A DNA stretch of 64,000 nt. It comes from Isurus oxyrinchus (taxonomy: Eukaryota). The stretch lies in the NCBI GenBank assembly GCA_026770705.1, contig JANJGN010000026.1:39990001-40054000 (forward strand), given 5' to 3'. The notes under the pieces are model-generated. The model was given only the letters and a program-made list of their open reading frames with translations, did no database searches and was not told the DNA's origin. The position numbers and the translations under genes were made by a program. Positions 1 to 61,199 of the stretch are shown in pieces. The stretch's first letter is position 1, and the number at the start of each line of letters is the position of its first letter.

Positions 1-193
1 AGATTTAGCGTGTCCGTAAACACAAACAAAGCGGAAGACTTTTATATATTTTTACAAGTCAAGTATTACTTATACCCATTATTTTATTTAGCTTCCATTT
101 TCTTTGACTTTTCCTGTTGTGATCGTGATCACCAATTTGAACAAACTCTTTCTGAGGTTTTTGTACGAGGATGTCGCTGTGCACAGCACTGTG

Positions 194-206
194 ATCCCCG
201 TAGTAT
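194..206 (-). other. Ig heavy-chain D1-type diversity segment (ATACTACGGGGAT) with V-facing 12-RSS and distal 22-RSS
   Basis: Plus strand: GGTTTTTGT(156-164)+22 bp+CACTGTG(187-193), 13-bp core, CACAGTG(207-213)+12 bp+ACAAAAACT(226-234). Asymmetric 12/22 flanks and a TACTAC core are typical of shark IgH D1; it lies ~370 bp from the VH RSS. Confidence 0.95.
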
Positions 207-604
207 CACAGTGAAATACACCCACACAAAAACTGCACCCACACTCTGATCAGTGCTGCCTCTCAATATTCACTTCAAATAGACGTTTACTTCTGATCTA
301 GTTTGGTATTTATGCAGCAATTTACAAAACTCAATGAACAGTGATTCCCTCCAAGTATCAGACATGTTAATATGAACATTATATCCAGGTCTGTAAATGC
401 GGAAACTGTTAACAGTAAATATAAACGCAGCCAAAAGCTCAGCCCATTATATCAATTGGTTTGTTAGGTTTTACTGTTAAATTTGCTGTTTTACGTTTGT
501 CAGAAGCGACTTGTTGTCGGGTTCTGATCATTACAGTTAATATTACATTTAAAACAAGTACTGACCGTCAGGTTACGATGAAAGTTGTTGAGTTTCTCTC
601 GATC

Positions 605-643
605 TGTTCTTGTTCGGGTCCAGCCCTGGTCCCTCTCGCTGTG
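605..643 (-). other. 23-RSS of the IgH V segment
   Basis: Minus strand CACAGCG + 23 bp + ACAAGAACA directly after YYCAKD. Confidence 0.93.
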
Positions 644-1122
644 GTCTTTTGCACAGTAATAGATGGCGGTGTCTTCCGTTTTCAGGCTCGTCATGTCCAA
701 GGAGAAGATGCTCCTTGAAGTGTCTTTGGACGCAGTGAATCGATTCTTAATTGCTGGGGCGTAGTTGTTGCTGGATGAACTATAGTAGTAAACCAGCCAC
801 TCCAGCCCCTGTCCGGGAACCTGTCGGACCCAGTACATGCTGTAGCTGCCAAGATTGAAGCCGCTGGTTTTACAGGTCAGTCTCAGGGAGCCTCCGGGAC
901 GCCCGGTCTCTGCCTCTGGCTGAGTCAACGCAACCTCCGACTGGACACCTGTAAAAATATATCAAAAGCCCGGAGGATTAATCCTGGTGAAATGATTTCT
1001 GACTCTGCAACATTTCAGAGAGAGACTAACACTGAGACAATAACAGTGAGAGACTTGGACAATAAAAACTACTCACAGGATAAGAAGGTCAGCAACAAAC
1101 TGAGAGAAATCGCCGACCTCAT
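644..1122 (-). CDS. IGHV: Shark IgM-type heavy-chain V segment, apparently functional (leader 1122-1077, V exon 948-644)
   Basis: Leader [15 protein letters not shown] with GTGAGT donor and phase-1 AG acceptor. V exon [53 protein letters not shown]...[33 protein letters not shown] has both Cys, the Trp and GLEW, with no stop. Closely resembles elasmobranch IgM VH. Confidence 0.96.
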
Positions 1123-3029
1123 TCTTCTGGTCATTTGGGGAAAATGGTTCTGTCCAGAACTCAGTGAACAAACCAGCTCCCGGACTGTTGGATTCTGGCC
1201 CCAGTGAGCGGCACTTAAATACCCGGCAGAAGGGGGCGGGTTTCCAGGCGCCGCCTGTTAATTCTCTGGTGGAGGCGGCGACTGGATCCACGCCCCACCT
1301 CCACATCCCCAACAGAATGGACTCAGATATTTACAATAGGTTATTGTTAAAAGTGGAAATTTTATCTGTATCGGGATATTTGGCTGAATGGATTCATTGT
1401 AATGTATCCATTGGTTCTAATGGTGAAATTGCAGTTGAGCATCTATTAATAAAAATCTAATTCCATTGTAAATTAAGTCCGTTTATTTCTACACTACTTC
1501 CTAACGGGTTGAACCTAAACAAAATATTACATTATCAGGGGAAAAAAGGGTCTATATATCACTACAATAATTAAGCGTCATCAGTTATAGGAATTATTAT
1601 TGATTTATGTAACTAAATGCAGGGGATGAACAAAGTGATTCTATTTACAGCCAGGGTGGCTATCGCTGTACAATTTGGGTCCAAAGATAAGAAGAATCTC
1701 CTCACGTTATACAATACCTCTCCTTGCATTTCTCGATCTGCCCCTGACCCAAAGACAGCCCTGTGAAAATTAGCGATAAAAGAAGCCCGCCTGCCTGATA
1801 ATTCAACAGTAAGTTTACAGACAAATGTAAAATTTACATCAACTTTTGATAAAGAAGTTAATGAATCAGAACAGTCACGGAGATCAGAAAAGTTATCCTT
1901 CAGCATCCAAATCATTGCAGCTAATTTTATTGGCCTCCCGCTGTCTACCATTCACTGGTATTGGAAACACAGGATATCAGGATTTTGCGGCATATTACAC
2001 AATATCACGAGAATAAATGTTTTATCTTCCACTGAAGCGGGTCATGAACATGTCATTTCTCCACTCATTGGCAGCTATGAGAGGGACTGTTAACTATTCG
2101 AAATCAGCACAAATTAAACTGTACAGTTCACGGTGCTAATGAGGTATAAGTGGCCACTCAGGTTAAATGAGGTGCACAACTGGGAGAATATTCAAGGAAT
2201 TCCTGCGGGTTCAATTCTATGATTTTCTTTCAATTTAATTTCTTTTAATTTTTTGCCATTCTACTCAGCTCATTAGACTGGGGGATTGAGACCATCAACA
2301 TCGCTCTCTCGCACTCCATGAAGTTCATAATCAACCGGCTTTAATAACTGGAATGCCCTTTTGTTTTAGAAATAATATAAATTAGTAATATGTGGTGAAT
2401 TTAATATTTCCTGATCGAGTTTAATCTCACAGTGAACACGGCATTTATTCAAATATTTCCCTAAATGAAATACCATTTAAAAATATCTTTCGTGTGCGAG
2501 AGAAACATTTATTGTTTGAATGGCTAAATCCCATTTTGTTCATTCATATCCAGGCTAATCTGCCCCACACAGTATTTGGAAGCAAGCCAGCCGGCTGCAG
2601 TCACGGTGGCTCGAATGTCCGATGTTGTTTACAGGAAGCATCAGGGAGTTTGTGCAGTAAATGAAAGATCTGTTTCCTCAGTCCTGACCGCTTGGCTGCA
2701 AGCCAACTTCAAACCGTTAATATTGTCAACATAGCCTATTGATAACAAATCTACCCAGCAACAACACTGGAGTCAGCTTTATTTATTAAATTTTGAATTT
2801 ATGTGAACTGTTCCCATCTCTCAGGAAAGAAAAGTTATCTAGCTTCTCTGACACCCTGTTAGCATTAATAGCTCATTGGAGGATCTCTCCAACACATCAT
2901 AATATTGTGATGGATGAATGGATGGAAAGAATTACAGGCAGATTATCAGAGAGGACTCAGAGAGAGGATGCGTTTTGTCACAGTCAAACATATACATTTG
3001 TGCGATCTTTATGCCCCTTTGCTCTTTCA

Positions 3030-10379: not shown

Positions 10380-11760
10380 GTGGGACTTCAATATGGTGTC
10401 AATATTGCTGCTCTCCACATTGTCTCTGTTCATATTACACTCAGCCTGTCTCATTGTTATTGCTCTAGTCCATGTTTCTGTTTCTGTTTCTGTAATACGA
10501 GACCCTGTCTCAGTATTGCTGCTCTCCACCATGCCTCTGTTCAAACTACACTGGGCCTGTCTCACTGTTACTGCTGTAGTCCATGTTTCTGGTTCTGTAA
10601 CACTGGACTCTGTCTCAGTTATTGCTGCTCTCCATTGTTCATATTTTACTGGGCCTGTCTCATTGTTACTGTCCTAGTCCATGTTTCTGTTTCTGTAACA
10701 TTAGATCCTGTCTCAGTTATTTATCTAATTGTCCTCTGTTTATATTACATTAGTATATTCCCTTACTTTATTTCATAAGACCCTGGAAATAGGAGTTAAA
10801 TGGTTGAATTTAAACAGCTGCAAGATAGGAGAGGTCTGCAGATCATGAACACAAATCTGGGATGTAGTGAGGACAAGTCAAATCATCTAAATAGGCACCC
10901 ATGTTAATTATTCCCACCATCTTGCTGCCTTATCTTTACTATTTCCACCCCAGCCAATTTCCACATTATTGCGCTTGTGCAGTGCAGTAATAACTGAGGC
11001 AGGGTCTATTGTAATTTAAATACAGATATGATCCAGCACATAACTGAAACAGCGTCTACTGAAATACAGAGACAGTTCTAGATTAATATGTACAGAGACA
11101 GGTCAATTATAATATAAACAGAGACAGGGCCTTGTGTATTTGAAGCAAAGACAGGGTCTAGAGTAATATAAACAGAAACAGGATTCAGTATAATATAGAG
11201 ACAGGGTCTAGTGTATTATAAACATACAGGACCCAGTTAATATAAACAGGGGCAAGGCCTAGTGCAATATAAACAGAGACCGGATCTAATGTAATATAAA
11301 CAGAGACAGTGTCTAGTGCAAAATAAACAGAGACATGTCGAGTCTAATAATAACAGAGAAATGCCAAGTGTAATATAAACAGCGACATATCAAGTGCAAT
11401 ACAAACAGGGGCAGGGCCTAGTATAATATAAACAGAGACAAGGCCTAATGTAATGTAAACCGAGACAGGGATCAGTGTAACATAAACAGAAACAGGGTCT
11501 AGTGTAATATAAACAGGGGCAGGGCCGAGTGCAATATAAACAGAGACAGTGTCTCATGCAATATAAACAGAGACATGTCGAATATAATACAAATTGACAT
11601 GTTGATTGTCATATAAACAGGGACAGGGCCTAGTGCAATATAAAGAGAGCCATGTCGAGTGCAATAGAAACAGGGACAGGGCCTAGTGTAATACAAAGAG
11701 AGGCAGGGTCGACTGTAAAAAAAACAGAGACTGGGTCTGGTCGAATGCAATATTGAGACA
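10380..11760. repeat. Degenerate 27-bp satellite; orientation flips near 10.9 kb
   Basis: Units like CAGGGTCTAGTGTAATATAAACAGAGA and their reverse complement. Confidence 0.85.
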
Positions 11761-12770: not shown

Positions 12771-14024
12771 TTATAATCCATTTCATTAGATCAATTCATT
12801 TTGAAGTGTATGAACCGGGCTGAGAGAATATATTGGCTAGATATTGACTTCATGTTGTGGAGTAAAGACAGTGACCCATGGTGGAGAGACAAGACAAATA
12901 ACCAGAGAGGACAAAGAGACAGAGAGAGAGAGAGGATACAGGACATCCCTACAAACACATTTGCCATGACATTATATTTCGTGATAAGTGGGAATCTTAC
13001 TTAATTCTGAATATAGATATCATTGTGACATAATTCTCATATAACTGAATTTAAAAATGCTCAAAAAACAATTGCTACTGAAAGCGGTTGATGTATTTGC
13101 ATGTTTGACTCTATTTCTGTGCTGTGTTGATGGAGAAATATTTGCAGTGCTTTTGTGTCTCCAGAATCTAATCTGGGACTTCTATTTCTGTGTTTATTTA
13201 CATAAACGCCTGACTGATTTCAATGAAGTGTTCATGGCAGCAAAACCAGATAAACACAGACACTTATTGATTGGTTTCGTTCAAAACAAGGGTTTATTTT
13301 AAGAATATTGACAGTTGGCACAAAATTAATAGAAACATTTTCAACATCCACTAGAACAGATGTTATTTATTTCAAATAATTAAAAATACATTTAAATTAA
13401 TAATTCAATTCTGAAAGTTCTACTGTCACAATCAATGATGAATATTTGAACAGGGTGGGATTACACTCAATGTCAATTTGTTGGAAGATTTAACCAATTA
13501 AAAATGGACAATTTAAAATAGCAGCCAGAGGAGCGACCTATAATCATATTAATCTCAGTGTTTTCAACATATCACAACTAACATTTTAAAATGTTAACAT
13601 TTAGGAAGAATTTACATTTATAGAATGCTGCTTATGACACCAGGATGCCCTGAAGCCCTTGAAATTCGTTGATGTACATTTGTTGAAGTTTAGTCACTGC
13701 TGTAATATTGGAAATCCATCCGGTGATTTGTGCACAGCAAGCTCCCACGAATAGAGCTGCAAAAAATGATGAGATAATATGTGATTTTAGTTGAAGAATG
13801 AATACTGGACTAGCATAGTGGGGAGAACAGTCCTGCTCTATAGCTTGGTACCAAGGGAGATTTTGCACCTGTCATTGGCCTGAACGTTTGACCTGTTTCT
13901 CTCTCTATTGATGCCCACTGACCTGCTGAGTGGTTATTTTTTGCCCTGCTTCAGATTTCCCAAATCCGCAGTGTTTTGTAGTGTTTTAATTCATTCTTGG
14001 GATATGGGCGTCAATGATGAAGTA

Positions 14025-17000
14025 ATTCTTGCACTTGGCCCTGTCTCAGTTTATTCTTGTCCAGACCATATATCAGGAATCACTGCACTAGACATTGTCT
14101 CAGTTTATGTTACGTTAGACTCTGTATCATTAATCGCTGCAGTGGACCCTGTCTCAGTTTACATTAATCAAGACCCTATGTCAGTCATCTCTGCCCTGGA
14201 CATTGTCTGAGTTTATATTAATCTACACCCTGCATCAGTAACCACTGCGCTAGGCCCTGTCTCAGTTTCTATTAATCTTGACCCTGTATTAGTAATGACT
14301 GCACTGGACTTTGTCTGAGTTTATATTGATCAGGACCATATATTAGTAAACACTGCACTGGACCCTGTCTCAGTTTCAATTAATCTTCACCCTGTATTAG
14401 TAATGACTGCTCTAGGCCCTGATTCAGTTTATATTAGTCCAGACCCTCTAACAGTAATCATTGGAAAGGACACTGCCTCAGTTTATATTGATCCTGATCC
14501 TGTATCATTAATTACTGCACTAGCCCCTGTTCTAGTTTATAATAATCTCGTCCCTGTGTCAGTAATCACAGCACTCGGCCCTGTCACAGTTTGTATTAAT
14601 CTAGATTCTGTGCCAGTAATCACTGCACTAGACACTGTCTCACTTGATACTGATCTAGACCTGTATCAGTAATCAGTTTATATTATCACAGAATCACAGC
14701 ATCACACAGTGCAGAAGAGGCCCTTTGGCCCAACGAGTCTGCACCGACATGTGAGAAACACCTGACCTACCTGCCTAATCCCATTTTCCAGCATTTGGTC
14801 ATAGCATTGAATGTTATGACATGCAAAGTGCTCATCCAGGTATTTTTTAAAGGATTTAAAGGATTTTTTAATCTGGATCCTGTATTAGTAATCAGTGCAC
14901 TCAACATTGTCTGAGTTATGCTGATTGAGACACTGTATTAATAAACATTGTGCTAAACCCTGTCTCAGTTTATATTAATCTAGATCCTGTATCAGTCATC
15001 ACTGCACTATGGCCTGCCTCAGTTTAAATTAGTCCAGACCATCTATCAGTAATAATTGCAATAAGCCCCGTCTCAGGTTATATTAATCTAGATCTTGTAT
15101 CAGTAATGACTGCACAAGGCCCTGTCTCACTTTATATTAATCCAGACCCTGTATCAGTAATCACTGCACTTGGACCTATCTCAGTTTATATTGATCAGGA
15201 CACTGTATCAGTAATTACTGCAATCTGCCCTAAGTCAGTTTATATCAATTTAGACCCTCTATCAGTAATCACTGCACTTGGCCCTCTCTCTGTTTCTATT
15301 AATCTAGACCCTGTATCAATTATCACTGCATGAGGCCCTGCCTCAGTTTATATTAATCTAGGCTCTGCATCAGTAATCGCTCCACTGGACATTGTCTAAG
15401 TTCATATTGATTGAGACCATGTGTCAGTAATCACTGCACTCGGCCCTGCCGCAGTTTATATTAAGCTAGATGCGGTACAATATGCCAGGCCTCATTTTGT
15501 TTATCAATCTAGACCCTGTATCAGTAATCACTGCACTAGGCCCTATCTCAGTTTACATTAATTTAGTCCATGCAGCAGTAATCACTGCCCGAGCCCCTGT
15601 CCCAGTTATATTTATCTAGGCCCTGTGTCAGGTTATGTTAGTTCAGACCGTGTATCAGTAATTACTGCACAAGAGCCTGTCTCAGTTTATATTAATCAAG
15701 ACCCTGTTTCAATAATCACTGCACACGTCCCTGTTCCAGTTATTATAATCTGCACTCTGAATCTATAATCACTGCACTTGGCCCTCTCTCAGTTTCTATT
15801 AACCTAGATCCTGTATCAGTAATCACTGCAGTAGGCCCTGCCTCAAGTCAAATTTATCTCGGCCCTGTATCAGTGATCACTGCTTTGGGCACTGTCTGAG
15901 TTTATATTGATTGAGACCCTGTATCAATAATTACTGCACAAGAACCTGTCTCAGTTTATATTAAGCTAGATCCTGCATCTGTAATCACTGCAATGAACAC
16001 TGTCTCCATATATATTGCTCTAGGCTCTGTATCACTGCAATATGCCCTCCCTCAGTTTATATCAAATAGACCCTGTGTCAGTAATCACTGCACGTGACCC
16101 TGTCACAGATTCTATTAACATAGAGCCTGCATTTGTCATCACTGCACAATGCCCTGCCTCAGTTTATATCAATCAAGACCCTGTATCAGTAATCTCTGCA
16201 CTAGGCCCTGTCTCAGTTTATATTAGTCCAGAGCCTCTATCAGTAATCACTGCACTAGGCCCTTTCTCCATTGATATTGATCTAGATCTTGTATCAGTAA
16301 TCACTGCAAAGGACACTGTCTCAGTTTATATTGATCATGATCCGAATCATTAATCACTGCACTAGCCCTTGTCCTGGCTTATACTTATCAAGGCCCTATC
16401 TCAGTTTATATTAATCTGTACCCTGTATCAGCAATCACTGCACTATGCCCTGCCTCAGTTTTTTTAAAATCAGTCTAGACCCTGTATCAGTAATCACTGC
16501 ACTAGACCCTATCAAAGTTTATATTAATTTAGCCCCTGCAGCAGTAAACACTGCCTGAGCCCCTGTCCCAGTTATATTTATCTGGGCCCTGTGTCAGTGA
16601 ACAGTGCACCAGGCCCTGTCTCAGGTTATGTTAGTTCAGTCTGCGTATCAGTGATTACTGTACAAGAGCCTGATTCAGTTTATATTAATCAAGACCCTGT
16701 TTCAGTAATCACTGCCCTCGACCCTATTCTGGTTATAATAATCTGCACCCTGAATCTATAATCACCGCACTTTGCCCTCTCTCAGTTTCTATTAACCTGG
16801 ACACTGCATCGGTAATCAATTTAATATGTCCTGTCTTAGTTTATATCAATCTAGACCCTAAATCAGTAATTGCTGCACTATACATGATGATAGTTTTATA
16901 TTTATCAAGACCTTGGATCAGTGATCTCTGCACTAGACACTGTCTCATGTTATATTAATCCAGACCCTGCATCATTATTCACTGCACTAGACCTTATCTC

Positions 17001-18980
17001 AGTTTATACTGATGTACACCCTGTAACCATAATCACTTCAATGGACACTGTCTCAGTTTATATTGATCCTCATCCTTTATCATTAATCACTGCACGAGCC
17101 CCTGACCGAGTTTATATAACTCTCATCCCTGTGTCGGTAATCACTACACTAGGCCCTGCCTCACTTTATATCAACCTAGACCATCTATCAGTAAACACTG
17201 CACTAGGCCCTGTCTCAGTTCATATTGATCCAGACCCTGAATCAGTAATGACTGCACTATAGCCTGCCTCAGTTCATATTAATCTGTCCCTAAATCAGTA
17301 ATTGCTGCACTAGGCCCTGCCTCAGTTCATATTAATTTAGGCCATGTATCAGTAATCACTGCAATGGACACTGCCTCAGTTTATATTGACCCTGATCCTG
17401 CATCATTTATCACTGCACTCGCCTCTTTCCTGCTTTATATTCACCTAGGCCCTGTATCAGTAATCACTGCACTAGGCTCTGTCTCAGTTTACATTAATCT
17501 AGACCCTGTATCAGTAATCTCTGCACTCGACCCTATCTCAATTTATATTGATCTAGGCCATGCATCATAATCAGTGCAATGGACACTGTCTCATTTTATA
17601 TTAATTGAGGCCCTGTACCAGTAATCACTGTACATGCCTCCATTTATATCAATCCATATCCTGTATCAGTAATCACTGCACTAGACCTTAACTCAGTTTA
17701 TATTAGTCCAGAACCTGTATCAATAATGACTGAACTAGGGAATGCTTCAGTTTATTTTAGTCCAGACACTGTAACAGTGATCATTGCACTAGCCCCTGTC
17801 CCAATTTATATTTATTTAGACCCTGTATCAATGATCACTGCACAATGCCCTGTCTCAGTTTATATCAAGCTAGAGCCTGTATCAGTAATCGCAGCACTAT
17901 AATAAAAGCAAAAAACTGTGGATGCTGGAAATCCAAAACAAAAACAAAAATACCTGGAGAAACTCAGCAGAACAGGCAGCATCTGGGGAGAGGAGCCCAG
18001 TTCACGTTTCAAGTCCGCGTAACTCTTCAACAGAATGAAGGAAAAATAGAAAAGGGGTGAAATATGTCTTATTAGCTTATATCCCACCATTCCCTGCCCC
18101 CTTTAACCAGCTTATATTTCACCCCTTTTCTATTTTTCCAAAGTTCTGTTTAAAAGTCATGCAGACTTGAAACATTAACTGTGTTACTCTCCATAGATGC
18201 TGCCAGACCTGCTGAGTTTTTCCAGGTATTTTTGTTTTTGTTATTGTAGCACTATACCCTGTCTCGGTTTATATTAATCAAGACCCTGTATCAGTAATCA
18301 CTCTACTGGACACTGCCTCCTTTTATATTGATCAAGACCATGGATCAGTAATCATTGCACTTGGTCCTGTCTCAGTTTATATTAGTCTAGATCCTTTATG
18401 AGTAATCATTGCACTAGCCCCTGCATCAGTTTATATTGACCTAGACCCGGTAACAGTAATCACTGCACTTGGCCGCACCTCAAGTTTTATTAATCTAGAC
18501 CCTGTATCTCTAATCACTGCACTGGACACTCTCTCAGTTTATATTGATCTACCCACTGTATCAGTAATCATTGCTCTAGTCCCTGTCCTAGTTTATTTTT
18601 ATCTCAGCCCTCTATGAATAATCACTGCACTATGCTTGCCTCAATGTATATCAACCTAGACCCTGTATCAGTAATCACTGCACAGGGCATTGTCTGAATT
18701 TATATTGATCAAGATCCTGTAACAATAACCACTGGACCAGACCCTGTTCCAGTTTATATTAATCTAAATCCTGTGTCTGTAATCACTGCACTTGAGCATA
18801 TCTCAGTTCATATTAATCTAGATCCTGTATCAGTTATCACTGCACATGAGCCTGTCTCAGTTTACATTAATCTAGACACTGTATCAGTAAGCATTGCACT
18901 AGGCCCTGTCTCAGTTCATGATAATCTAGACCCTCCATTAGTAATCACTGCACTAGGCACTGTCTCAGTTTATATCAATC
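14025..18980. repeat. Large degenerate 54-bp (27+27) satellite
   Basis: Consensus TAGACCCTGTATCAGTAATCACTGCAC+TAGGCCCTGTCTCAGTTTATATTAATC; gives 18-aa periodic pseudo-ORFs (DPVSVITALGPVSVYINL). Interrupted by small TE insertions near 14680-14860 and 17900-18245. Confidence 0.93.
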
Positions 18981-18983
18981 TGG

Positions 18984-27255: not shown

Positions 27256-27992
27256 TTTGGGTGGATCAGATGCTGACTCTGCCGTTATCACACTGGATCC
27301 AGTGAATATTCATTGGCGCAGTGCAACCTGCCATCCCCTGTTATCATCAAACATTGCATTTGTTAGACACAACTTCCCTGATTTTAATCTGTTCCCTGTA
27401 TCCTATCATTGTATAAAACGCTGTCTCTGTAATAGTTGTACTAAGAACAGACCTGCCACTGAAATTCACATGCAAACCTCTCTCATTATTTCTGAAAACC
27501 TTTGGGTGGATCGGATGCTGACTCTGCCGTTATCACACTGGATCCAGTGAATATTCATTGGCGCAGTGCAACCTGCCATCCCCTGTTATCATCAAACATT
27601 GCATTTGTTAGACACAACTTCCCTGATTTTAATCTGTTCCCTGTATCCTATCATTGTATAAAACGCTGTCTCTGTAATAGTTGTACTAAGAACAGACCTG
27701 CCACTGAAATTCACATGCAAACCTCTCTCATTATTTCTGAAAACCTTTGGGTGGATCAGATGCTGACTCTGCCGTTATCACACTGGATCCAGTGAATATT
27801 CATTGACGCAGTGCAACCTGCCATCCCCTGTTATCATCAAACATTGCATTTGTTAGACACAACTTCCCTGATTTTAATCTGTTCCCTGTATCCTATCATT
27901 GTATAAAACGCTGTCTCTGTAATAGTTGTACTAAGAACAGACCTGCCACTGAAATTCACATGCAAACCTCTCTCATTATTTCTGAAAACCTT
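27256..27992. repeat. Near-perfect tandem triplication, 245-bp unit
   Basis: TTTGGGTGGATC starts at 27256, 27501 and 27746; only two substitutions noticed. Confidence 0.96.
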
Positions 27993-29799: not shown

Positions 29800-31640
29800 C
29801 ATGGTCTAGTCTAGAAATAATTGACGCAGGTTTAGTGCAGTAATTACTGAATAAGTACCTGGCTTAATATCAATTGATATTAATCCACTCTCGGGGCTAG
29901 GATCTGGTGCATAGATTAATAAACTCCTAGAGAGGACCTGGTGCAGTAATAACTGAGATTGCCTCTCGTGTAAGATAAATAAAAACATGATCCATTGGAA
30001 TAAAAACAGAGACAAAGTGTGTGTAATATAAGATGTATGAACTCGTGCAGCAACAACAAAGGCAGGCTTGACCTTTGTATGTAAAAACATTGGGTCCAGA
30101 GACTTTGCCATAGGTGATGCAACCAGAGACACGGCTGAAATCGGAACAGCTGAGACGAGGCCGAGCACTGAAATAACTGCGGCAGGGACTGGTGTAATAT
30201 TATCATAGACATAATCTATTTCAATATAAACAAAGTCAGGGTCTGGTGCAGTAGTACTGAGACAGGGCTGAGTGCTCCAATTATTGATACAGCACCTACA
30301 GCAATATAAACCGTGACCGAGCCTAGTCTCAGCGATTGCTGAGCCAGGATTTAGTGCATTAATAACAGACTTGGCCTTGTGTAATATAAACAGGGACATA
30401 GTCTGTACAGCCATAACAAATACAGGATCTAATCTAATTTAAACTGAGACAACGTCTAGTGTAATATAAACTGAGGCAGGTTCTAGTGTAATATAAACTG
30501 AGACGGGGTCTAGAGCAATATAAATTGAGACAGAGTCCAGTGTACTATAAACTGAGACGGGGTCCATTGTAATATAAACTGAGACAAGGTCCAGTTTAAT
30601 ATAAACAGAAATAAGGTCCAGCGTAATGTAAATGGAGACAGGCAGGGGAATACGTACTCAGGTGTGGTCTAACAGAATATAAGCAAAGACGTCATCTAAT
30701 GTAATATAAACAGGGACATGATCTACTGGAATAAAAAGTGAGGCAGTGCCGAGTGCAGTAATAAATGAGGCAAGGCCTTGTGTAATATGAACAGCAACAT
30801 GGTCTAGTTTAGTAATAACCAAGACAGGATCTAGTGAAAGGAAACTGACACGGAGTATACTGTAATTTTACCTGTTACAGGACCTTGACTAATGTAAACT
30901 GAGACAGAACCTAGTGTAGTAATTACCAACTAAGTGCCTGGATTAATATAAAGAGATGTTGGCAAGTGCAGCAATAAGAGAGACATTGTATTAACAATAG
31001 TAACAGTGACAGGGCATCATGTAATATAAACAGGGACATAGACATAGCATTGACCGAGACATCCACTAGTTTAGTATAAATGTGGCAGGGTCTATTATTG
31101 CAATATCTGAGACAGATATTGTGTCATGCAAACTGGAACATGTTCTGGTTTAGTATAAGCAGAGACAAGTACTAGTGGAGTAACAGCTGAGACATGGGCG
31201 ATTGTCATATCAGCCAAAATATGGGTCAATGCAATCATAACGAAGGGAATGTCGAGTGTAATATGGCCTTGACAAAAACAGAATTACCTGGAAAAACTCA
31301 GCAGGTCTGGCAGCATCGGCGGAGAAGAAAAGAGTTGACGTTTCGAGTCCTCATGACCCTTCGACAGAACTAGTTCAACTCTTTTCTTCTCCACCGATGC
31401 TGCCAGACCTGCTGAGTTTTTCCAGGCAATTCTGTTTTTGTTTTGGATTTCCAGCATCTGCAGTTTTTTTTGTTTTTATTATTATAGTAATATGGCCTTG
31501 GTCCGTTGTATTAACAACTGAGATTGGGCCTATTACAGAAATAACTGAGACACGACCGATTGTAATATGATCAGAGATTTGAATTAGTGTAATACATATA
31601 GACACAGGGTCAAGTTTATTATGAACAGGGACATGGTCCA
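29800..31640. repeat. Highly degenerate 27-bp satellite (reverse orientation)
   Basis: Units like GGTCTAGTGTAATATAAACTGAGAC, best preserved at 30420-30640; same family as 10.4-19 kb. Confidence 0.75.
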
Positions 31641-35630: not shown

Positions 35631-35913
35631 CAACGACAGAATGAGACAGATAGACCCTCCAATGAAGAAAGTACCTGAGCTACCGAGAAAGACAGGGAGA
35701 AAGAGAAAGTCAGGGAAAATAATCGGCCCAGAAGCAATTGGTGCCCAATTGTCATCAGTCTTGAGAGAGCAGCCAATCATGTCGCTGGGAAATGCCTTTC
35801 AGTTTCTCAATAAGTGAAGCTTGCCCCGATCCGAATTTCCTCTTTATCTCAGAACAGAGTGTCAACATATTTCTAATCTTATCTTACTTCATCCGAATTC
35901 TAATCCTGACACC

Positions 35914-36384
35914 ATATGCTCCCAGTGCCCCTTAATGATAATAATGATCTTACTGCCTGGTGAGTCAATGTTTAAATGGTCAGTGTCTGTTCCATTTGTT
36001 ATATTCAATTCCAGATATTTGATACGTTCTGTGTTTTGTTCCAGGAACAAATGGTCAAGATTCAGTGTCCCAGGATCCCCCTAAATTAACGGCTCTTGAA
36101 GGACAAGGCATAAAACTGGAATGTATTTATTCGGCAGCTGGTGTAACTCTGTTCTGGTACATCCAGTACCCCGGGGAAGCTCCGAGATATTTAATGAAGA
36201 TATATAGCTCGGGGAATGCAGAAAATTTCCAGATTTCCCAGATAGATTCTCCGCTGTTTTGCACAATGGGAACAAAACGGTTCCTTTAAATACCGCTGGG
36301 GCTTTTCTCTCCGACAGCGCCGTGTATTTCTGTGCCATGGAGCCCACACTGCTGCAGAGATATAGCGTATCCCGTACAAAAACC
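35914..36384 (+). pseudogene. TCR alpha/delta V pseudogene (inverted paralog of 46161-46634)
   Basis: Leader with ATG>ATA (35914), GTGAGT donor, V exon from 36045 QDSVSQDPPKLTALEGQGIKLECIYS...LFWYIQYPGEAP; 1-nt frameshift near 36225; SDSAVYFCAMEP; CACACTG...ACAAAAACC (36345-36384). Confidence 0.92.
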
Positions 36385-36404
36385 CTGCTGGGAATTCCAG
36401 TCAG

Positions 36405-36423
36405 TGCTCAGCAGAGGGGGCTG
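36405..36423 (+). promoter_or_regulatory. CTCF-binding motif just downstream of V RSS
   Basis: TGCTCAGCAGAGGGGGCTG, ~20 bp after the nonamer; matches CTCF core CCASYAGRKGGCRS; conserved behind paralogous RSSs. Confidence 0.7.
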
Positions 36424-36607
36424 TCACACCTAAAAAACGGAAACAATTCAGCCTGTAACTCTTTCGAGTACAAACACGTTTCCAACTGTTTCAGATGAAG
36501 TTACATTGTTTCATAGCTTGCCATTGTGAGATTTGAACTCTTGATACTCTTTCAAGCACAAACCCGTTTCCATCTGTTTCAGATGAAGTTACATTGTTTC
36601 ACAGTTT

Positions 36608-36679
36608 TGCCATTGTGAGATTTGAACTCTCAATTTTGGTGTTACAAACCCAGTGCCATAACCACTTGGCTATTTAGGC
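36608..36679 (-). mobile_element. tRNA-derived SINE head or pseudo-tRNA, with a duplicated ~85-bp tail (36459-36631)
   Basis: GCCTAAATAGCCAAGTGGTTATGGCACTGGGTTTGTAACACCAAAATTGAGAGTTCAAATCTCACAATGGCA: A-box, B-box, 72 nt, but a broken acceptor stem. Confidence 0.6.
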
Positions 36680-37401
36680 CTGTAGGTGTCACATGGTCAT
36701 TAATGAAATATCAAAACCAATCATAACGCTGAACAAGAACAGCTGAGCAGCAACTGAGGAATTCTATGAGTTGGGATTTTAGCACGCATCTATACTAAAC
36801 ATGAATTTCCCAAATTAATTTGTGGTGCGTTAATTCACATTTTGCCTTTTGATGATCTTTCCTTGCCTGTCGAGAATTATTGCCCCTTTCTCGATCTCCA
36901 CTGTCTCTTTCAAAGTCTCTTTGGTCAACGCCGGCACATGTTGTCTATTTGACCAGACTATTTTTCTGGTTCATGGAAGGTAGGTAGAAAATGAACACAT
37001 TTCACAAGGGAATGATTGCGCTCTTTTAAACAAGCCCCAAGCACAGAGTTCCCTCAATGTGCATTGTCCTTTCGAGTGTCTGCTTGATATTTTCTTACAC
37101 CATTCACAACCCGGTGTTTCTGTTTTTCAATAACCAGACAAGGGGATCCATCCCCACCCCTGTCCCTAATAATATAATATTTCCGTTATAAGGACACAGA
37201 CAATAGCCCCGCTCGGGCTATTTACATTCACTGACAGCCGCTCCCCTCCGCTACCAAACCCCCCGCCCACCCCACCACCTACAGGTCTTAAAGAACCAAC
37301 GGATACACAAGGGAATGAGGTGAGAGGGTCCCGAGAATAACAACCGATTATTGATGGTTTCTGCTAATCTCAATTTCCCTTTCACAGAGCGGACAGCGAC
37401 A

Positions 37402-37990: not shown

Positions 37991-38204
37991 AACCACATTC
38001 ACCTCGGATCAAACCGGCAACAACTGTTTCCAGCAGCGGCCAAGAAAACAAACTGCAGAATCCGACCCTACCGAACACATGTCAAATAAATCTACAGGTT
38101 AAACCATCTTTCCTGTTTCTGATCAGCTTTTATTTCCCTTAAACTCCGAGCTCGATATTCAGATCAGCTCCGGGAAAGATGTTTCTGATCCTCAAACCAG
38201 ACCG

Positions 38205-38510: not shown

Positions 38511-39050
38511 ATGAAGCTGAGCCTCACTTTAGTGATCATCTCCCTGGATTTCTTACTTTTCCCTCCGTGTTAGTGTGCTCACTATTCCTGACCAGAATAT
38601 TTTATACATCCCTTATGTTGTTTTACATTGTACTTTACTTTATTGCATATCTTCTATTATCTTGTTCTTATTGTGCTATATTATAGTTTATTGTGCTAGA
38701 TAATATTGATTTCATCTTATTACTCTATATCTACATATTCTTCTCAGACTCCACTGACAGTGAAGAAATGTCACAATCTCCCAAGTCAGTGGTTGCTACC
38801 AAAGGAGAAACTTCATCGTTCAGCTGTTCCATTAGAGTAGGAGGACAGATCCTACATTGGTACAGGCAACACCCGGACAGAACCGTGCAGCACCTGGCCA
38901 GTGTTCGGGACAGGATCACAGCTCGGTTGATTGCAGTAGAGAAGAGCAGTGCTCTGAATGTTAGTGACGCTCGAGTGACAGACACCACCACCTATTTCTA
39001 TGCGGTTGGGACACAGTCCAGCAAAGATCAGTAGAGATCGTACAAACACC
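38511..39050 (+). pseudogene. TCR alpha/delta V, open frame but second Cys>Tyr and CDR2 deletion (ORF or pseudogene)
   Basis: Leader MKLSLTLVIISLDFLLFPP (38511-38568, GTTAGT donor); V exon 38748-39011 SEEMSQSPKSVVATKGETSSFSC...LHWYRQHPDRTVQHLASVRDRITAR...TDTTTYFYAVG; CACAGTC+23+ACAAACACC. Confidence 0.88.
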
Positions 39051-40798: not shown

Positions 40799-40817
40799 GA
40801 GCGCCCTCTGCTGAGCA
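40799..40817 (-). promoter_or_regulatory. CTCF-binding motif downstream of V RSS
   Basis: Minus strand TGCTCAGCAGAGGGCGCTC, near-consensus, 22 bp after the nonamer. Confidence 0.78.
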
Positions 40818-40839
40818 CTAACTGGAACTCTCAGTGTGG

Positions 40840-41370
40840 GGTTTTTGAACGGGGTCCACGTCTCTGCAACAGTATGGGCTCTCTGGCGCAGAAATATACC
40901 GCGCTGTCAAAGATCAGGGCATTGCAGATCATTAGCTCGGTAATCTTGGCTGTTTTATTTAACATAGCTGAAAAGCGATCGGTGATGTCGGTGTGTCTGT
41001 ATTGTTTCCCTCCCCGAATGTGAAGCATGTACTGTGGAGGCTGCCCGCGGCGCTGACTGTACCAGTACACATAAGGGTTAGAATCGCTTGTTTTCAAGGT
41101 GCAAGTTAGTGTGACATTACTTTAATCTTCCGCCGTTATTTCAGCAACCGGTTGTTCCACTGTCTCTGGGTGGCTCCATTCTAACATAAAACAATAGCAA
41201 TAACAACAATCAGCATCAGCCTCATTTAAGTAAACATAATCGTCATCAACATCACCATTTTCTTACTAAAAACAACATCTGGGTTACAGCATCAGGAAGA
41301 GAATGGAGTTTTACTGGGAAGGAAGTACTTACTGAGAAGTGATGAGGAGCGGAGCGAGACGGTTCCCCAT
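40840..41370 (-). pseudogene. TCR alpha/delta V pseudogene
   Basis: Leader MGNRLAPLLITS (out of phase), V exon 41180-40877 ETVEQPVAEITAED*SNVTLTCTLKTSDSNPYVYWYSQ...FDSAVYFCAREP; stop at 41124-41122; RSS degenerate (CATACTG+21+TCAAAAACC). Confidence 0.92.
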
Positions 41371-44520: not shown

Positions 44521-44749
44521 TGGTTTGTGGAACAGAAACATTTTTCCTCGGAGGTGATCTGAATATCGAATCCTGAGTTTAAGGGAAATAAAACAGGAAA
44601 CAGGAACAGGAAAGACGGTTTAACCTGTAGTTTCATTTGGTGGTCGATCTGTCGGTAGGGCTGGAATCTGCAGTTTGTTTTCTCGGCCGCTGTTGGAAAC
44701 AGTTGGATGACAGTTTGATCCGAAATGAATGTGGTTTCCTCTCGGTTTG

Positions 44750-45390: not shown

Positions 45391-46121
45391 TGTTGCTGCC
45401 CGCTCTGTAAAATGTAAATTTTGATTAGAAGGAACTTGTAATCTTCACCATCAAGTATCTTCTGATGTTTCTCAACATCATCTCACTTCACTTCCTTGTG
45501 TATCCAGTGATGCTTTAAGGTTTGTAGTTGGGAACACGCTGGCAGCGAATGGAAACAACCCGAGCTGAGCTATAGTCAATGCCCTTTCAAGAGGAATGGT
45601 TACATGGTTAGGGACCGGGATGGGACTGGACCCCCTGGTTTAGTTATTACAATTCAGAAGCACTGGTTTGTTAATGGCGTCAGGAAAGGTTTGACACTCG
45701 AAAGGAGAATGAACATTGCGGGAACTCTGTCCTCGGGGCTTGTTTTAAAGAGTGATAACACAAACTGATAAAGTGTCTTCGTTTTCTATAAACTGTTTTT
45801 GAACCAGCAAAATACTCTGGTCAAATAAACACCACGTACAGGCTTTGACAAAAGGGGCCTTGAAGGAGAGAGTGGAGAAGGAGAAAGGGCTGCATAAGAG
45901 TTCAGGCAGGCAATGAAAGATCATCAAAAGACTATATGTGAGTTAGTGCAATACAAATTTATTTGTGGAATTAAATTTTACTACAGTTGCAAGTTAAAAT
46001 CAGCTAATATAATTCCTCAGTTGCTGCTCACCCGTTCTTCAGCGTTGTGTTTGTTTTGATATTTTATTGAAGACTCTCTGACCCTCAAAGGCTGAGTTGT
46101 TGCTTCAGTTTAGCGGTGTGA

Positions 46122-46140
46122 GAGCGCCCTCCGCTGAGCA
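46122..46140 (-). promoter_or_regulatory. CTCF-binding motif downstream of V RSS
   Basis: Minus strand TGCTCAGCGGAGGGCGCTC, 20 bp after the nonamer. Confidence 0.72.
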
Positions 46141-46160
46141 TTAATGGGAAATCCCAGTGG

Positions 46161-46634
46161 AGTTTTTGTACGGCATCCCCTATATCTTTGCAGCAGTGAG
46201 GGTTCCAAGGCACAGAAATACACGGCGCCGTCGGATAGAAGAGCCCCGGTGATATTTAAATGAACCGTTTTGTTTCCTTTGTGCAAAACAGCAGAGAACC
46301 TGTCTGGGAAATCTGGAGATTTATCTATATTCCCTGAGCTATATATCTTCATTAAATATGTCGGAGCTTCCCCGGGATACTGGATGTACCAGAACAGGGT
46401 TGGGGCAGCAGCCGTCGAATAATTACAATCCAGTTTTATGCTCTGTCCTTCCAGGACCTTTAATTCAGGGGAATCCTGGGACACTGAATCTTGACCATTT
46501 ATTCCTGCAACAAAACACAGAATGTATCAAATATCTGGGAGTGAAGATAACACAAGTAACGGACACGACCATTTAAACATTGACTCACCAGGTAGCAAGA
46601 TCATTATTAGCAGCAAAGAACATGGGGAGCACAT
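46161..46634 (-). CDS. TCR alpha/delta V segment, open frame (leader 46634-46589, V exon 46504-~46201), RSS heptamer non-canonical
   Basis: MCSPCSLLLIMILLP|GINGQDSVSQDSPELKVLEGQSIKLDCNYSTAAAPTLFWYIQYPGEAPTYLMKIYSSGNIDKSPDFPDRFSAVLHKGNKTVHLNITGALLSDGAVYFCALEP; nonamer ACAAAAACT; heptamer reads CTCACTG(+24) or CACTGCT(+22). Confidence 0.92.
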
Positions 46635-51848: not shown

Positions 51849-52326
51849 CTGAAGCCCGTGTGTAGCTTCTTGTTAATTCTGCTGAATATAATATCCATCT
51901 TCTGTTTCTAACCTGACCTCCCTGGGCAATCGTTTCAGCCGCTTTTTCATGTGATCTGATAATGATCAGAATTTACATAATCTGTTTTTCACTCTGATCT
52001 ACAAGGAGGTGGCCGGTAAGGATGAGGTGGTGCAGCTCCCTGGGCAGGTGGTCTTTAGGGAAGCGGAAATCGTAACCATGAACTGCACTCGCACCACAGC
52101 GTTTAACCTCGTGTTTTGGTACAGACAGCTCCCGAATCAGCCACCCCAGTATCTGGTAATGGCCACAAGAGGAACCGGTCATCAAGGGAGGATCACGGCT
52201 TCAATCGGTGAAGGCAGCAAACTCAGTATCCTGACTGTGAGCGATGCCCAAGCTACAGACACTGCCACCTATCTCTGCGCTGTGGGCCACAGTGTAAAAA
52301 ACATATGTGGCGCTCGTACAGAAACC
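51849..52326 (+). pseudogene. TCR alpha/delta V with open V exon and canonical 23-RSS but defective leader
   Basis: V 52009-52287 KDEVVQLPGQVVFREAEIVTMNCTRTTAFNLVFWYRQLPNQPPQYLV...SDAQATDTATYLCAVG; CACAGTG+23+ACAGAAACC. Leader starts CTG rather than ATG, donor GTTTCT is weak, and available acceptors are phase 0. Confidence 0.85.
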
Positions 52327-56291: not shown

Positions 56292-56762
56292 TTCTATGAA
56301 GTGTTCAGATGCCCCTGAGAGGCTGTGAGAGATCCAATGTTCATTCAATAACCCGATATGAGATTTCTGGTTCAAAGGAAGCTCGGTTGGAGCAGTTTTG
56401 AATTCACATGCCGAGCAGAAACAATGGTTTATATAGTTAAACTATATACTGGAAAAAGGAAAGTTCAACAATTATGGGTAAAAGTGGAGACAGGCAATGA
56501 TAAGGCACAGGGCCAAAAAGGAAATCATCAGACAAAGGGTGAGTTCAGGCTGCATTGGTGCATTTGTGGAGTTTGTATTTTATTACATATATAACTTAAA
56601 ATTACAAACGAATATATTTTTGCCAGTGGACCTCATCTGTTCGTTTTGAGTGCCTTACTTCATTACACTTTTTAAAACCTCTTTGTGACTCTCCCTGAAT
56701 TATTGCTTCCGTTTATTGCTGCGAGAATGGCCTCTCTTGAGCAGTAACTGGAATATTCAACG

Positions 56763-57270
56763 TCTTTTTGTTTGGGATCCGCTGTATCCCTGAAACTGCG
56801 TCGTGCTCATGGTACAGAAAAACAAGACGGGGTCGGAGATCAGGACATTGATGATCGTTGACTCGTTGGTATTAGCAGTTTTACTGAACATGCAGGAGAA
56901 TCGATCAGCAATTTAAAGGTTCTTGTTGACTGTCTCTCCGATGATCTGGAACACCCACTGCGACCTGAATCGGTAGTGCTGACTGTAACAGAAAACTGAA
57001 GGGTTAGAATCACTTGTTTCCGAGATGCAGCTCACTGTGACATTAATCTCCTTTTCAAGCATCATTTCTGGAACTAACTTTTCCACTGAGTTTTGTTCCC
57101 TCTTTTCTAACATAAAATAAAGCAACGCTCATTACCGTCATCATTACCATTGTCACAGTTTTATTTTTTAGCAGAATTAATAGCTAAACTACGGCAGTCA
57201 GGGGGATAATTGATTTTATTAGGAAGGAAGTACGTACTCAGCAGTGATTTAATGATGAGGAAATGGCAAT
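56763..57270 (-). pseudogene. TCR alpha/delta V pseudogene (paralog of 40840-41370)
   Basis: V exon 57106-56803 QNSVEKLVPEMMLEKEINVTVSCISETSDSNPSVFCYSQ...L*IADRFS...ISDPVLFFCTM; Trp lost, stop, heptamer decayed, nonamer ACAAAAAGA. Confidence 0.85.
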
Positions 57271-60700: not shown

Positions 60701-61160
60701 ATGCATTTAAAATTCACCCTTTTAACTACCCTCACCTACTTAGCATTTGGTAAGTCTACATGGGAAGTTATAGTACAAACCATTAAAAACTCACTGATTC
60801 TTAGAAAATTCGCAATTCAGTTGTAATCTATACTTTCAATTAGATCTGAGTCACGAAGATTCTGTGTCCCAGGGTTGGTCAGCAGTCGTCCTGAAAATCG
60901 GACAGACGTTCAGAACGCAGTGCAGCTATTCGACAACAGCAACCTGGTATGACCTGTACTGGTACCGAAAGTATCCCGATGATCGCCCGGAGATGATTGT
61001 GTGGAGAAGTACCAGTGGCAGTGGAGGGAAAGCGGAAAACATTGGGAATCGCTTCAGTTCTGTAATAAACAAATCGTCAAAAACGTCTGTTTTAACAGTC
61101 ACTGCTCTTCAGCTGAGCGACACGGCACTCTACCTTTGTGGATTCGCCCGATCAGATCGA
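60701..61160 (+). CDS. TCR alpha/delta (Vdelta-like) V segment, apparently functional (leader 60701-60749, V exon 60844-61160)
   Basis: MHLKFTLLTTLTYLAF|DLSHEDSVSQGWSAVVLKIGQTFRTQCSYSTTATWYDLYWYRKYPDDRPEMIVWRSTSGSGGKAENIGNRFSSVINKSSKTSVLTVTALQLSDTALYLCGFARSDR; GTAAGT/AG phase 1; no stop. Confidence 0.94.
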
Positions 61161-61199
61161 CACAGTGACACAACCCAATCCTTCTCTCGTACAAAAACT
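61161..61199 (+). other. Canonical 23-RSS
   Basis: CACAGTG+23 bp+ACAAAAACT. Confidence 0.96.

What the first reader, a model, noticed from the sequence alone, without database searches (positions are those of the whole stretch)
156..1122. Intact IgM-type VH-D unit linked in cis to a TCR alpha/delta V array
Seen: a complete shark IgM-like VH with 23-RSS and a 12/22 D, 35 kb from many TCR-type V segments. Known: sharks make chimeric IgHV-TCRdelta chains, and Ig-like V-D units occur in the nurse shark TCR alpha/delta locus. Inference: the D's distal 22-RSS could join a 12-RSS TCR D or J, so this unit may feed antibody V domains into T-cell receptors. The window ends 155 bp past the D, so a full IgM cluster to the left cannot be excluded.
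Basis: partly seen in the sequence, partly recalled or inferred. Interest (0 to 1): 0.8.

Follow-up and report, generated by a model that had tools for sequence, protein, structure and literature searches.

The report
Shark IgM gene front end beside TCR V segments
This is most likely the front end of an ordinary shark IgM antibody gene cluster that lies next to mostly decayed T-cell-receptor V segments, a neighbourhood that a 2025 paper already describes in sharks.

Summary
On the minus strand lie a split leader, an open VH exon, a 23-RSS and, 437 bp downstream, a 13-nt D with a 12-RSS and a 22-RSS.

The VH is of the classical IgM lineage. It is 78% identical to horned-shark HV01_HETFR, and the leader matches at 14 of 15 residues.

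The layout and spacing are those of the V-D1 part of a shark IgM minicluster (PMC5192425, PMC2435157). D2, JH and Cmu would lie left of the window. One untested scan note places a J-Cmu intron 7.65 kb to the left.

TCR-type V segments are real: six clear ones and one relic at 36-61 kb. Only two have a canonical RSS. Orientations are mixed, and the window holds no D, J or C.

IgH clusters linked to TCR alpha/delta, with TCR-type V exons between them, are in print, with a catshark among the species (PMC12227049). The scan saw the same neighbourhood on another piece of this genome (s1-864177).

The 12/23 argument is valid but does not discriminate. A dedicated TCR-feeding V-D unit is not supported. 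Interest is low.

The parts
1077..1122 (-). VH leader exon. ATG at 1122, 46 nt, donor GTGAGT at 1076. A second in-frame ATG lies at 1134.
   Evidence: It matches the HV01_HETFR leader at 14 of 15 residues. The splice joint is seen in contigs of family members.
949..1076 (-). Leader intron, 128 nt (GT...AG).
   Evidence: Joint 945->1074 with the cut shifted +3, skipping 128 nt, in X1 and X17. No depth at 988-1034 in any of the 4 runs.
644..948 (-). VH exon of the IgM lineage. It is open and ends ...YYCAKD.
   Evidence: Pfam V-set E 9.8e-20. 83% identical to an S. torazame protein and 78% to HV01_HETFR.
605..643 (-). VH 23-RSS: CACAGCG, 23-nt spacer, ACAAGAACA.
   Evidence: Read through the same place, bamboo-shark P0002 also gives DHSER.
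207..234 (-). D 5' 12-RSS: AGTTTTTGT, 12-nt spacer, CACTGTG.
194..206 (-). D coding segment, 13 nt. Taken as D1 of an IgM cluster. It lies 437 nt downstream of the V coding end.
   Evidence: The spacing fits the 250-500 bp given in PMC5192425 and the ~400 bp given in PMC2435157.
156..193 (-). D 3' 22-RSS: CACAGTG, 22-nt spacer, ACAAAAACC.
1214..1221 (-). TATA-like TATTTAAG about 95 nt upstream of the ATG. Candidate promoter element, inferred only.
   Evidence: Read. There is no ATGCAAAT octamer near it (one match in the window, at 13095).
36023..36384 (+). TCR-type V (context). Pseudogene with a frameshift. RSS CACACTG, 24-nt spacer, ACAAAAACC.
38756..39050 (+). TCR-type V (context). Short, and the second Cys is replaced (YFY). 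RSS CACAGTC, 23-nt spacer, ACAAACACC.
   Evidence: The Pfam V-set match is below the curated cutoff (20.3 bits against 26).
40834..41121 (-). TCR-type V (context). The exon is open, but the heptamer reads CATACTG.
46113..46526 (-). TCR alpha-type V (context). The exon is open and a leader lies 165 nt upstream, but the heptamer reads CTCACTG.
   Evidence: Its best single-domain PDB matches are TCR alpha chains.
52009..52326 (+). TCR alpha-type V (context). Open exon with a canonical 23-RSS. My crude scan found no leader.
   Evidence: Its best single-domain PDB matches are TRAV12-type alpha chains.
56760..57128 (-). Decayed TCR-type V relic (context), split over several reading frames.
   Evidence: (E 4.7e-4).
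60864..61199 (+). TCR-type V (context). Open exon with a canonical 23-RSS. My crude scan found no leader.
   Evidence: All 60 PDB rows shown are antibody-type constructs and none is a TCR chain.

Best explanation
Window 156-1122 (minus strand) is the 5' part of an ordinary elasmobranch IgM heavy-chain minicluster: leader, VH with 23-RSS, then D1 with 12/22 RSSs. D2, JH and the Cmu exons are expected to continue leftwards, beyond the window's first base.

Inferred working, from the known pathway: in B-lineage cells RAG joins V to D1, D1 to D2 and D2 to JH within the cluster, and the VDDJ exon is spliced to Cmu.

The cluster lies head-to-head, across a 35-kb repeat-rich spacer, with a group of mostly defective TCR alpha/delta-type V segments. 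This is part of the published shark antigen-receptor complex, in which IgH clusters and TCR-type V exons are interspersed.

Any contribution of this VH to TCR-delta chains would be the incidental, already described trans- or long-range rearrangement of IgM V segments in thymocytes. It would not be a dedicated function of this unit.

Shown here: the anatomy, the V lineage, splicing and transcription at the level of the V family, and the nature and state of the neighbouring V segments. Inferred: D2-JH-Cmu to the left, and use by B cells.
For: - Anatomy is exact: split leader, open V, 23-RSS, then a D 437 nt downstream with 12- and 22-spacer RSSs whose heptamers are perfect.
- The spacing fits 'VH-D1 ... 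250-500 base pairs apart' (PMC5192425) and 'about 400 bp apart ... 6.3-6.8 kb from the Cmu1 exon' (PMC2435157).
- All 24 proteins that reached E <= 0.001, of 25 candidates, are VH-type. The best are 83% (S. torazame), 82% (C. punctatum) and 78% (HV01_HETFR, named Ig heavy chain V region).
- The leader matches HV01_HETFR at 14 of 15 residues.
- In a tree of 22 rows, the VH sits in the 18-row VH group. A 100/99 branch separates that group from the window's four TCR-type V rows.
- Contigs at 92% or more likeness show the leader intron removed at the predicted sites, with very high depth on both exons.
- Lead only, untested: scan note s1-870910 places a 'J-Cmu intron of a shark IgM cluster' 7,651 letters before the window start. 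That is about where a minus-strand cluster starting at this V would have it.
Against: - The left flank was not read, so D2, JH and Cmu are not shown. The only pointer is an unchecked AI note.
- Other scan notes report V-D-J units without constant exons inside TCR V arrays of this genome (s1-863999, s1-866034), so truncated units do exist here.
- Most read depth on the V exon comes from paralogues. At position 680, 269,924 of 275,973 depth units in X1 carry the other base. Expression of this particular copy is therefore not shown.
- The V nonamer matches the consensus at only 7 of 9 positions, and the heptamer reads CACAGCG.
- The tree held no IgW or TAILV reference rows, so it does not separate those lineages.
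Confidence: 0.8

Rival explanations
1. A dedicated TCR-feeding V-D unit: a TAILV-like VH that kept one Ig D. The unit has no Cmu of its own, and its V, or a V-D1 joint using the distal 22-RSS, joins TCR-delta D or J to give VH-bearing TCR-delta chains.
For: - The RSS geometry allows it: a 23-RSS or 22-RSS can pair with the 12-RSS of a TCR D or J (the 12/23 rule is established knowledge).
- TCR-type V segments lie in cis.
- Scan notes report VH units without constant exons, and a VH beside TCR-delta D, elsewhere in this genome (untested).
- IgH clusters are RAG-accessible in nurse-shark thymocytes, and V-to-D1 joints are frequent there (PMC2435157).
Against: - The geometry is the same as in every IgM cluster, so it does not discriminate.
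- The window holds no TCR D, J or C (0 J-like segments).
- The unit faces away from the two intact TCR-type V segments.
- Published chimeras are described as IgH V joined to TCR-delta D, J and C (PMC6795676).
- A note places a J-Cmu intron 7.65 kb downstream (untested).
- A note places TCR-delta D-J-C about 10 Mb away (s1-871158, untested).
Confidence: 0.07
2. A dead or silent IgM cluster copy. The V-D1 part looks intact, but the cluster is broken further downstream or never expressed, like other decaying copies in this genome.
For: - The window's own bases are a small minority of V-family depth at several positions.
- The V nonamer is weak, at 7 of 9.
- No octamer lies near the promoter.
- Scan notes describe several dead IgM clusters in this genome (untested).
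- The neighbouring TCR-type V segments are mostly decayed.
Against: - Everything visible is intact: ATG, splice sites, open frame, conserved Cys and Trp, and a CAC start on all three heptamers.
- Some contigs match with 0-1 differences, for example X16 record 23 (0 in 76 nt) and X17 record 27 (1 in 96 nt).
Confidence: 0.12
3. Assembly artefact. The IgM cluster and the TCR-type V group are joined falsely somewhere in the repeat-rich 1.3-35 kb spacer.
For: - The spacer holds a ~5-kb 54-bp satellite at 13.9-19.0 kb, further 27-bp arrays, and a perfect 3 x 245-bp repeat. Assemblies can go wrong at such places.
- No laid record spans the stretch (which covered 1-1400 only).
Against: - The window has no N.
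- The same kind of neighbourhood is reported from four chromosome-level elasmobranch assemblies (PMC12227049).
- The scan noted it on another piece of this genome (s1-864177).
Confidence: 0.04

Closest known systems
Elasmobranch IgM heavy-chain minicluster (VH-D1-D2-JH-Cmu), as in horned shark and nurse shark
   Same: - Split leader, VH with 23-RSS, and a D about 400 bp downstream with a 12-spacer RSS on the V side and a 22-spacer RSS on the far side.
- VH 78% identical to horned-shark HV01_HETFR, with a near-identical leader.
- Segment spacing as in PMC5192425 and PMC2435157.
   Different: Nothing visible differs. D2, JH and Cmu lie off the window and were not seen.
Shark antigen-receptor complex (AgRC): IgH clusters linked to TCR alpha/delta, with TCR alpha/delta-type V exons between IgH clusters (Flajnik et al. 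2025, PMC12227049)
   Same: An IgM-type cluster lies 35 kb from TCR alpha/delta-type V exons on one chromosome piece. One V (61 kb) resembles antibody V domains more than TCR alpha in PDB matches. That may correspond to the paper's V domains 'intermediate in sequence'.
   Different: The paper's coordinates (table S1) are in a supplement that I could not open. I cannot say whether this very cluster is listed there.
TAILV / VH-delta: Ig-like V segments resident in TCR alpha/delta loci and used with TCR-delta (Deiss et al. 2019, cited in PMC12227049; the paper itself is not held)
   Same: A VH-type V with a 23-RSS lies in cis with TCR-type V segments.
   Different: This unit carries its own Ig-type D1 and shows the IgM cluster layout. 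It points away from the intact TCR-type V segments, and no TCR-delta D, J or C is nearby. That TAILV is a lone V segment is my recollection, not a call.
IgM/IgW VH to TCR-delta trans-rearrangements in nurse shark (Criscitiello et al. 2010, as cited in PMC6795676 and PMC12227049)
   Same: The same kind of VH with a 23-RSS could take part. IgH clusters are open to RAG in thymocytes (PMC2435157).
   Different: That is a property of IgM and IgW V segments in general, not a feature of this locus. No chimeric transcript of this VH was seen or could be sought here.

Membership tests
Elasmobranch IgM minicluster | VH with split leader, open V exon and 3' 23-RSS | tested here: met
   The splice is confirmed at family level.
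Elasmobranch IgM minicluster | D1 some 250-500 bp downstream of VH, with a 12-RSS on the V side and a 22/23-RSS on the far side | tested here: met
   The distance is 437 nt, with spacers of 12 and 22. The spacing range is from PMC5192425. The RSS asymmetry of D1 is recalled.
Elasmobranch IgM minicluster | D2 and JH about 400 bp further on each, on the same strand | not testable with these tools
Elasmobranch IgM minicluster | Cmu exons several kb downstream of JH | not testable with these tools
   There is only an unchecked scan note of a J-Cmu intron 7,651 letters before the window (s1-870910).
Elasmobranch IgM minicluster | V belongs to the IgM VH lineage, not to IgW or TAILV | tested here: inconclusive
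   78% identical to HV01_HETFR, leader 14 of 15, and nearest neighbours are catshark and bamboo-shark VH. No IgW or TAILV reference sequence was available for the tree.
Elasmobranch IgM minicluster | Transcribed, and spliced from leader to V | tested here: inconclusive
   Clear for the V family: joints in X1, X15 and X17, and no depth in the intron bin 988-1034. Most depth is from paralogues, so this copy is not shown.
TAILV / VH-delta (TCR-resident Ig-like V) | A lone V segment without an Ig D, J or C of its own | tested here: not met
   An Ig-type D with 12/22 RSSs follows 437 nt downstream. The feature definition is recalled.
TAILV / VH-delta (TCR-resident Ig-like V) | Lies among TCR V segments upstream of D-delta, J-delta and C-delta, and points towards them | tested here: inconclusive
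   It lies at the edge of a TCR-type V group and points away from the 4 + strand V segments. The window has no D, J or C. A note puts TCR-delta D-J-C about 10 Mb to the left, with orientation unknown (untested).
TAILV / VH-delta (TCR-resident Ig-like V) | Transcripts join the V to TCR-delta D-J-C | not testable with these tools
One loose end at 649 is a CDR3-like run-on of a family member, and its constant region is not seen.
TCR alpha/delta V array (the neighbours) | V-set exons with 23-RSS that are most similar to TCR alpha/delta V domains | tested here: met
   Five of the 5 TCR-type exons tested match Pfam V-set at E <= 0.001; one of them, the 38.7-kb V, scores below Pfam's cutoff. The V segments at 46 and 52 kb have TCR alpha chains as their best single-domain PDB matches. 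The V at 61 kb matches antibody-type domains instead. The word search found no named relatives for the V segments at 52 and 61 kb.

The most novel reading that the evidence does not exclude
This IgM-type cluster is a regular dual-use donor. In thymocytes its V-D1 joint, a frequent intermediate in sharks, uses the distal 22-RSS of D1 to join a 12-RSS TCR-delta D or J in cis over megabases. The resulting TCR-delta chains would carry both an antibody V and an antibody D segment, a junction type that the papers I could read do not describe.
Probability: 0.07. Interest if true: 0.55.

Novelty: already known. Interest (0 to 1): 0.2.

Why it matters
As it stands, the locus is one more instance of two published facts: the IgM minicluster layout, and the close linkage of IgH clusters with TCR alpha/delta-type V exons in sharks (PMC12227049).

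Its use is modest. It gives a precisely annotated boundary between an IgM cluster and a TCR-type V group: head-to-head, with a 35-kb repeat-rich spacer. That boundary could serve studies of how chromatin keeps Ig and TCR rearrangement apart or lets them mix.

Tried and rejected
The word search returned no protein of the window itself. The one read-laying run showed no piece running past base 1 with readable sequence. The key test therefore stays undone.

Expression of this copy. Contigs at 92% or more likeness are dominated by paralogues, so nothing can be said about this copy's partners. Three low-depth joints (144->688, 157->793, 162->662; depth about 2, one contig each, 'between: not known') do not fall at RSS borders. 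I take them for contig chimeras, not V-D joints.

Lineage test against IgW and TAILV. No such reference sequence came from any tool. The tree separates VH from TCR-type V segments only. Rows left out of it: P0011-P0013 (unnamed), P0017 and P0022-P0024 (fragments).

Naming the TCR-type V segments from shark relatives. The word searches for the V segments at 52 and 61 kb found nothing. I used PDB sequence matches instead. Multi-domain scFv rows top those lists because they hold several V domains, so I judged by single-domain chains.

Genes in the spacer. None of the 10 longest ORFs between 2.8 and 35.6 kb matched Pfam at E <= 0.01. No V-like ORF scored better than E 0.57 between 1.3 and 36 kb. 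In that HMM the row for the 41-kb V was mis-framed by my slip, and three window V segments were in the model, so their own scores are by construction.

Octamer. ATGCAAAT occurs once in the window, far from the VH.

Big protein search.

Papers. I read sections 6 and 15 and passages of PMC12227049. I read passages only of PMC5192425, PMC2435157, PMC6795676 and PMC4279169, and an abstract passage of PMC2191167. Not held: Deiss 2019, Ott 2021, Criscitiello 2010 and Hsu 2016. What I say of TAILV anatomy is recalled. Table S1 of PMC12227049 (a supplement, closed) may list this cluster.

Spliced model. I searched the V exon alone and did not join leader and V in any call. The joined step was left out.

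Full report
OBSERVATION. The feature is real, and it lies on the minus strand.

- Leader exon: it starts at ATG 1122, with a second in-frame ATG at 1134. It encodes [15 protein letters not shown] plus one base and ends at a GTGAGT donor.
- Leader intron: 128 nt, 1076-949, ending in AG.
- V exon: 948-644. It is open, with the usual Cys, Trp and YYC, and ends ...YYCAKD. Pfam V-set E is 9.8e-20.
- V RSS: it follows the exon directly and reads CACAGCG, 23 nt, ACAAGAACA.
- D: it lies 437 nt further on. It is 13 nt long (206-194), with AGTTTTTGT-12-CACTGTG on its V side and CACAGTG-22-ACAAAAACC on its far side.

At the threshold I used, the window has 8 RSS-like sites. One hundred first-order Markov sequences gave 1.76 +/- 1.29, with a maximum of 6. 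Seven of the 8 abut a V or D coding end. The eighth (40752, minus strand) lies about 120 nt past a V.

WHAT THE V IS. The word search with the V exon alone gave 24 proteins at E <= 0.001 among 25 candidates, all VH-type.

- The best are 83% (Scyliorhinus torazame), 82% (Chiloscyllium punctatum) and 78% (HV01_HETFR, named Ig heavy chain V region of Heterodontus francisci).
- The leader matches that horned-shark protein at 14 of 15 residues.
- The bamboo-shark model P0002, read through the same place, also gives DHSER. The CACAGCG heptamer therefore seems to be a family trait rather than damage.
- In a tree of 22 rows the VH falls in the 18-row VH group. A 100/99 branch separates that group from the four TCR-type V rows of the window. 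There is no resolution inside the group, and no IgW or TAILV rows were available.

The V is therefore a classical IgM-lineage VH, as far as I could test.

WHAT THE LAYOUT IS. [quoted passage not shown] In nurse shark the segments are 'about 400 bp apart' and '6.3-6.8 kb from the Cmu1 exon' (PMC2435157, passages). V(23)-437 nt-(12)D(22) is what the V-D1 part of such a cluster looks like. That D1 carries 12 and 22/23 spacers, D2 12/12 and JH 23 is my recollection, not a call. The window ends 155 nt past D1, so D2, JH and Cmu would lie to the left.

THE LEFT FLANK. I could not read it.

- The word search returned no protein of the window itself.
- The reads call gave no piece running on with readable sequence.
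- One unchecked first-reader note of this scan (s1-870910) places a 'J-Cmu intron of a shark IgM cluster' 7,651 letters before the window's start.

That position is about where a minus-strand cluster beginning at this V would have its long intron. It is a lead, not evidence.

READS (the stretch laid was window 1-1400; the runs are coded X1, X15, X16 and X17; all are contigs; likeness 92% or more).

- Both exons carry very high depth. The intron bin 988-1034 has none in any of the 4 runs.
- Joints remove the leader intron at the predicted borders: 945->1074 with the cut shifted +3, skipping 128 nt, in X1 and X17. Neighbouring variants appear in X1 and X15.
- X1, listed as 'DNA?', therefore behaves like cDNA.
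- Most depth is from paralogues. At position 680, 269,924 of 275,973 depth units in X1 carry C where the window has T.
- Contigs 99% or more alike number 1,212 of 4,910 in X1, 33 of 131 in X15, 23 of 83 in X16 and 1 of 6 in X17.

The V family is transcribed and spliced. This copy's own expression and its partners remain unknown. One loose end at 649 (X15) is a CDR3-like run-on of a rearranged family member.

SURROUNDINGS.

V-like exons. A V-domain HMM run over 994 six-frame ORFs of 35 aa or more found, besides the VH, V-like exons at these places (see the caveats under Tried and rejected):
- 36.0-36.5 kb (+), in two frames, so frameshifted
- 38.7-39.0 kb (+)
- 40.8-41.1 kb (-)
- 46.1-46.5 kb (-)
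- 52.0-52.4 kb (+)
- 56.8-57.1 kb (-), a relic
- 60.8-61.3 kb (+)

Between 1.3 and 36 kb nothing scored better than E 0.57.

State of these V segments. Only those at 52 and 61 kb combine an open exon with a canonical 23-RSS. The others have a frameshift (36 kb), no second Cys (38.7 kb), or heptamers that start CAT (41 kb) or CTC (46 kb).

Type. The best single-domain PDB matches are TCR alpha chains for the V segments at 46 and 52 kb. For the 61-kb V, all 60 rows shown are antibody-type constructs.

Other segments. No J-like segment exists in the window.

The spacer. It is repeat-rich:
- a 54-bp satellite over 13.9-19.0 kb
- 27-bp arrays at 11.1-11.7 kb and, inverted, at 30.4-30.6 kb
- a perfect 3 x 245-bp repeat at 27,256-27,992

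None of its 10 longest ORFs matched Pfam.

Orientation. The VH points left, and the four + strand V segments point right. The two groups are head-to-head. The three minus-strand V segments, which share the VH's direction, are all defective.

LITERATURE.

- Flajnik et al. [quoted passage not shown] - A review describes those chimeras as Ig heavy-chain V segments joined to D, J and C of TCR-delta (PMC6795676).
- In nurse-shark thymocytes IgH clusters are extensively but partially rearranged, with V-to-D1 joints frequent and Ig transcripts undetected (PMC2435157).

The cis linkage is thus in print, and the route by which an IgM VH can reach a TCR needs only the V's own 23-RSS.

MECHANISM.

Most likely (0.8): this is an ordinary IgM minicluster. 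RAG joins V, D1, D2 and JH within about 2 kb in B-lineage cells, and the product is spliced to Cmu. This step is inferred from the family. In thymocytes the cluster may be cut and partly joined, and on rare occasions its V may be joined to TCR-delta D. That is a general property of shark IgM V segments, not a feature built into this locus.

Rivals:
- a dedicated TCR-feeding V-D unit without Cmu (0.07)
- a silent or downstream-broken cluster copy (0.12; compatible with the anatomy seen)
- an assembly misjoin in the satellite-rich spacer (0.04)

Untested scan notes place TCR-delta D-J-C about 10 Mb to the left on the same piece (s1-871158). They also report VH units without constant exons elsewhere in this genome. 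This keeps the first rival alive but does not favour it here.

NOVELTY AND VERDICT. The arrangement is already known, both as a gene layout and as a neighbourhood. The scan met the same neighbourhood before on another piece of this genome (s1-864177). Interest is 0.2.

LIMITS.
- The left flank is unread.
- Copy-specific expression is unknown.
- No IgW or TAILV references were available.
- The TAILV and trans-rearrangement primary papers are not held.
- The species is known to me only from scan notes (a catshark) and from the best protein hit.

Noticed in passing
window 35860-38019 and 44708-46688: A large inverted duplication, with arms 78-86% complementary (pairs I1-I4 and I6). It makes the V segments at 36 kb (+) and 46 kb (-) mirror-image copies, and the 41-kb V lies between them. 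Both copies are defective in different ways: a frameshift in one and a CTC heptamer in the other.
   Followed up: partly
window 13943-18981, 11066-11738, 30435-30642: A satellite of about 5 kb built of 54-bp units (27-bp sub-period). Related 27-bp arrays lie on either side, one of them inverted. It is a likely weak point for assembly between the IgM cluster and the TCR-type V segments.
   Followed up: no
window 27256-27992: Three tandem copies of a 245-bp unit at 99-100% identity. It is either a very recent duplication or an assembly artefact.
   Followed up: no
window 60864-61199: An open V exon with a perfect 23-RSS heptamer. All 60 PDB rows shown for it are antibody-type constructs, and none is a TCR chain. 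The word search found no relative. It may be one of the V domains 'intermediate in sequence between TCR and Ig' mentioned in PMC12227049.
   Followed up: partly
window 38756-39050: A short TCR-type V whose second canonical Cys is replaced (YFY). It still has a fair 23-RSS. Its Pfam V-set score is below the cutoff.
   Followed up: partly
window 46085-46110, 40800-40825 and 36385-36400: GC-rich motifs of the type GCTCAGCGGAGGGCGCT lie about 20 nt past the RSS nonamers of the 36/41/46-kb V family. The resemblance to a CTCF site is my recollection.
   Followed up: no
run X1 laid on window 1-1400: A run listed as 'DNA?' has no depth inside the leader intron and hundreds of thousands on both exons, and it carries spliced joints. 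It behaves like cDNA or an Ig-repertoire library.
   Followed up: no
window 1123-1134 and 1214-1221: A second in-frame ATG lies 12 nt upstream of the leader ATG and would add MTRR. A TATA-like TATTTAAG lies about 95 nt upstream. No ATGCAAAT octamer is nearby.
   Followed up: partly
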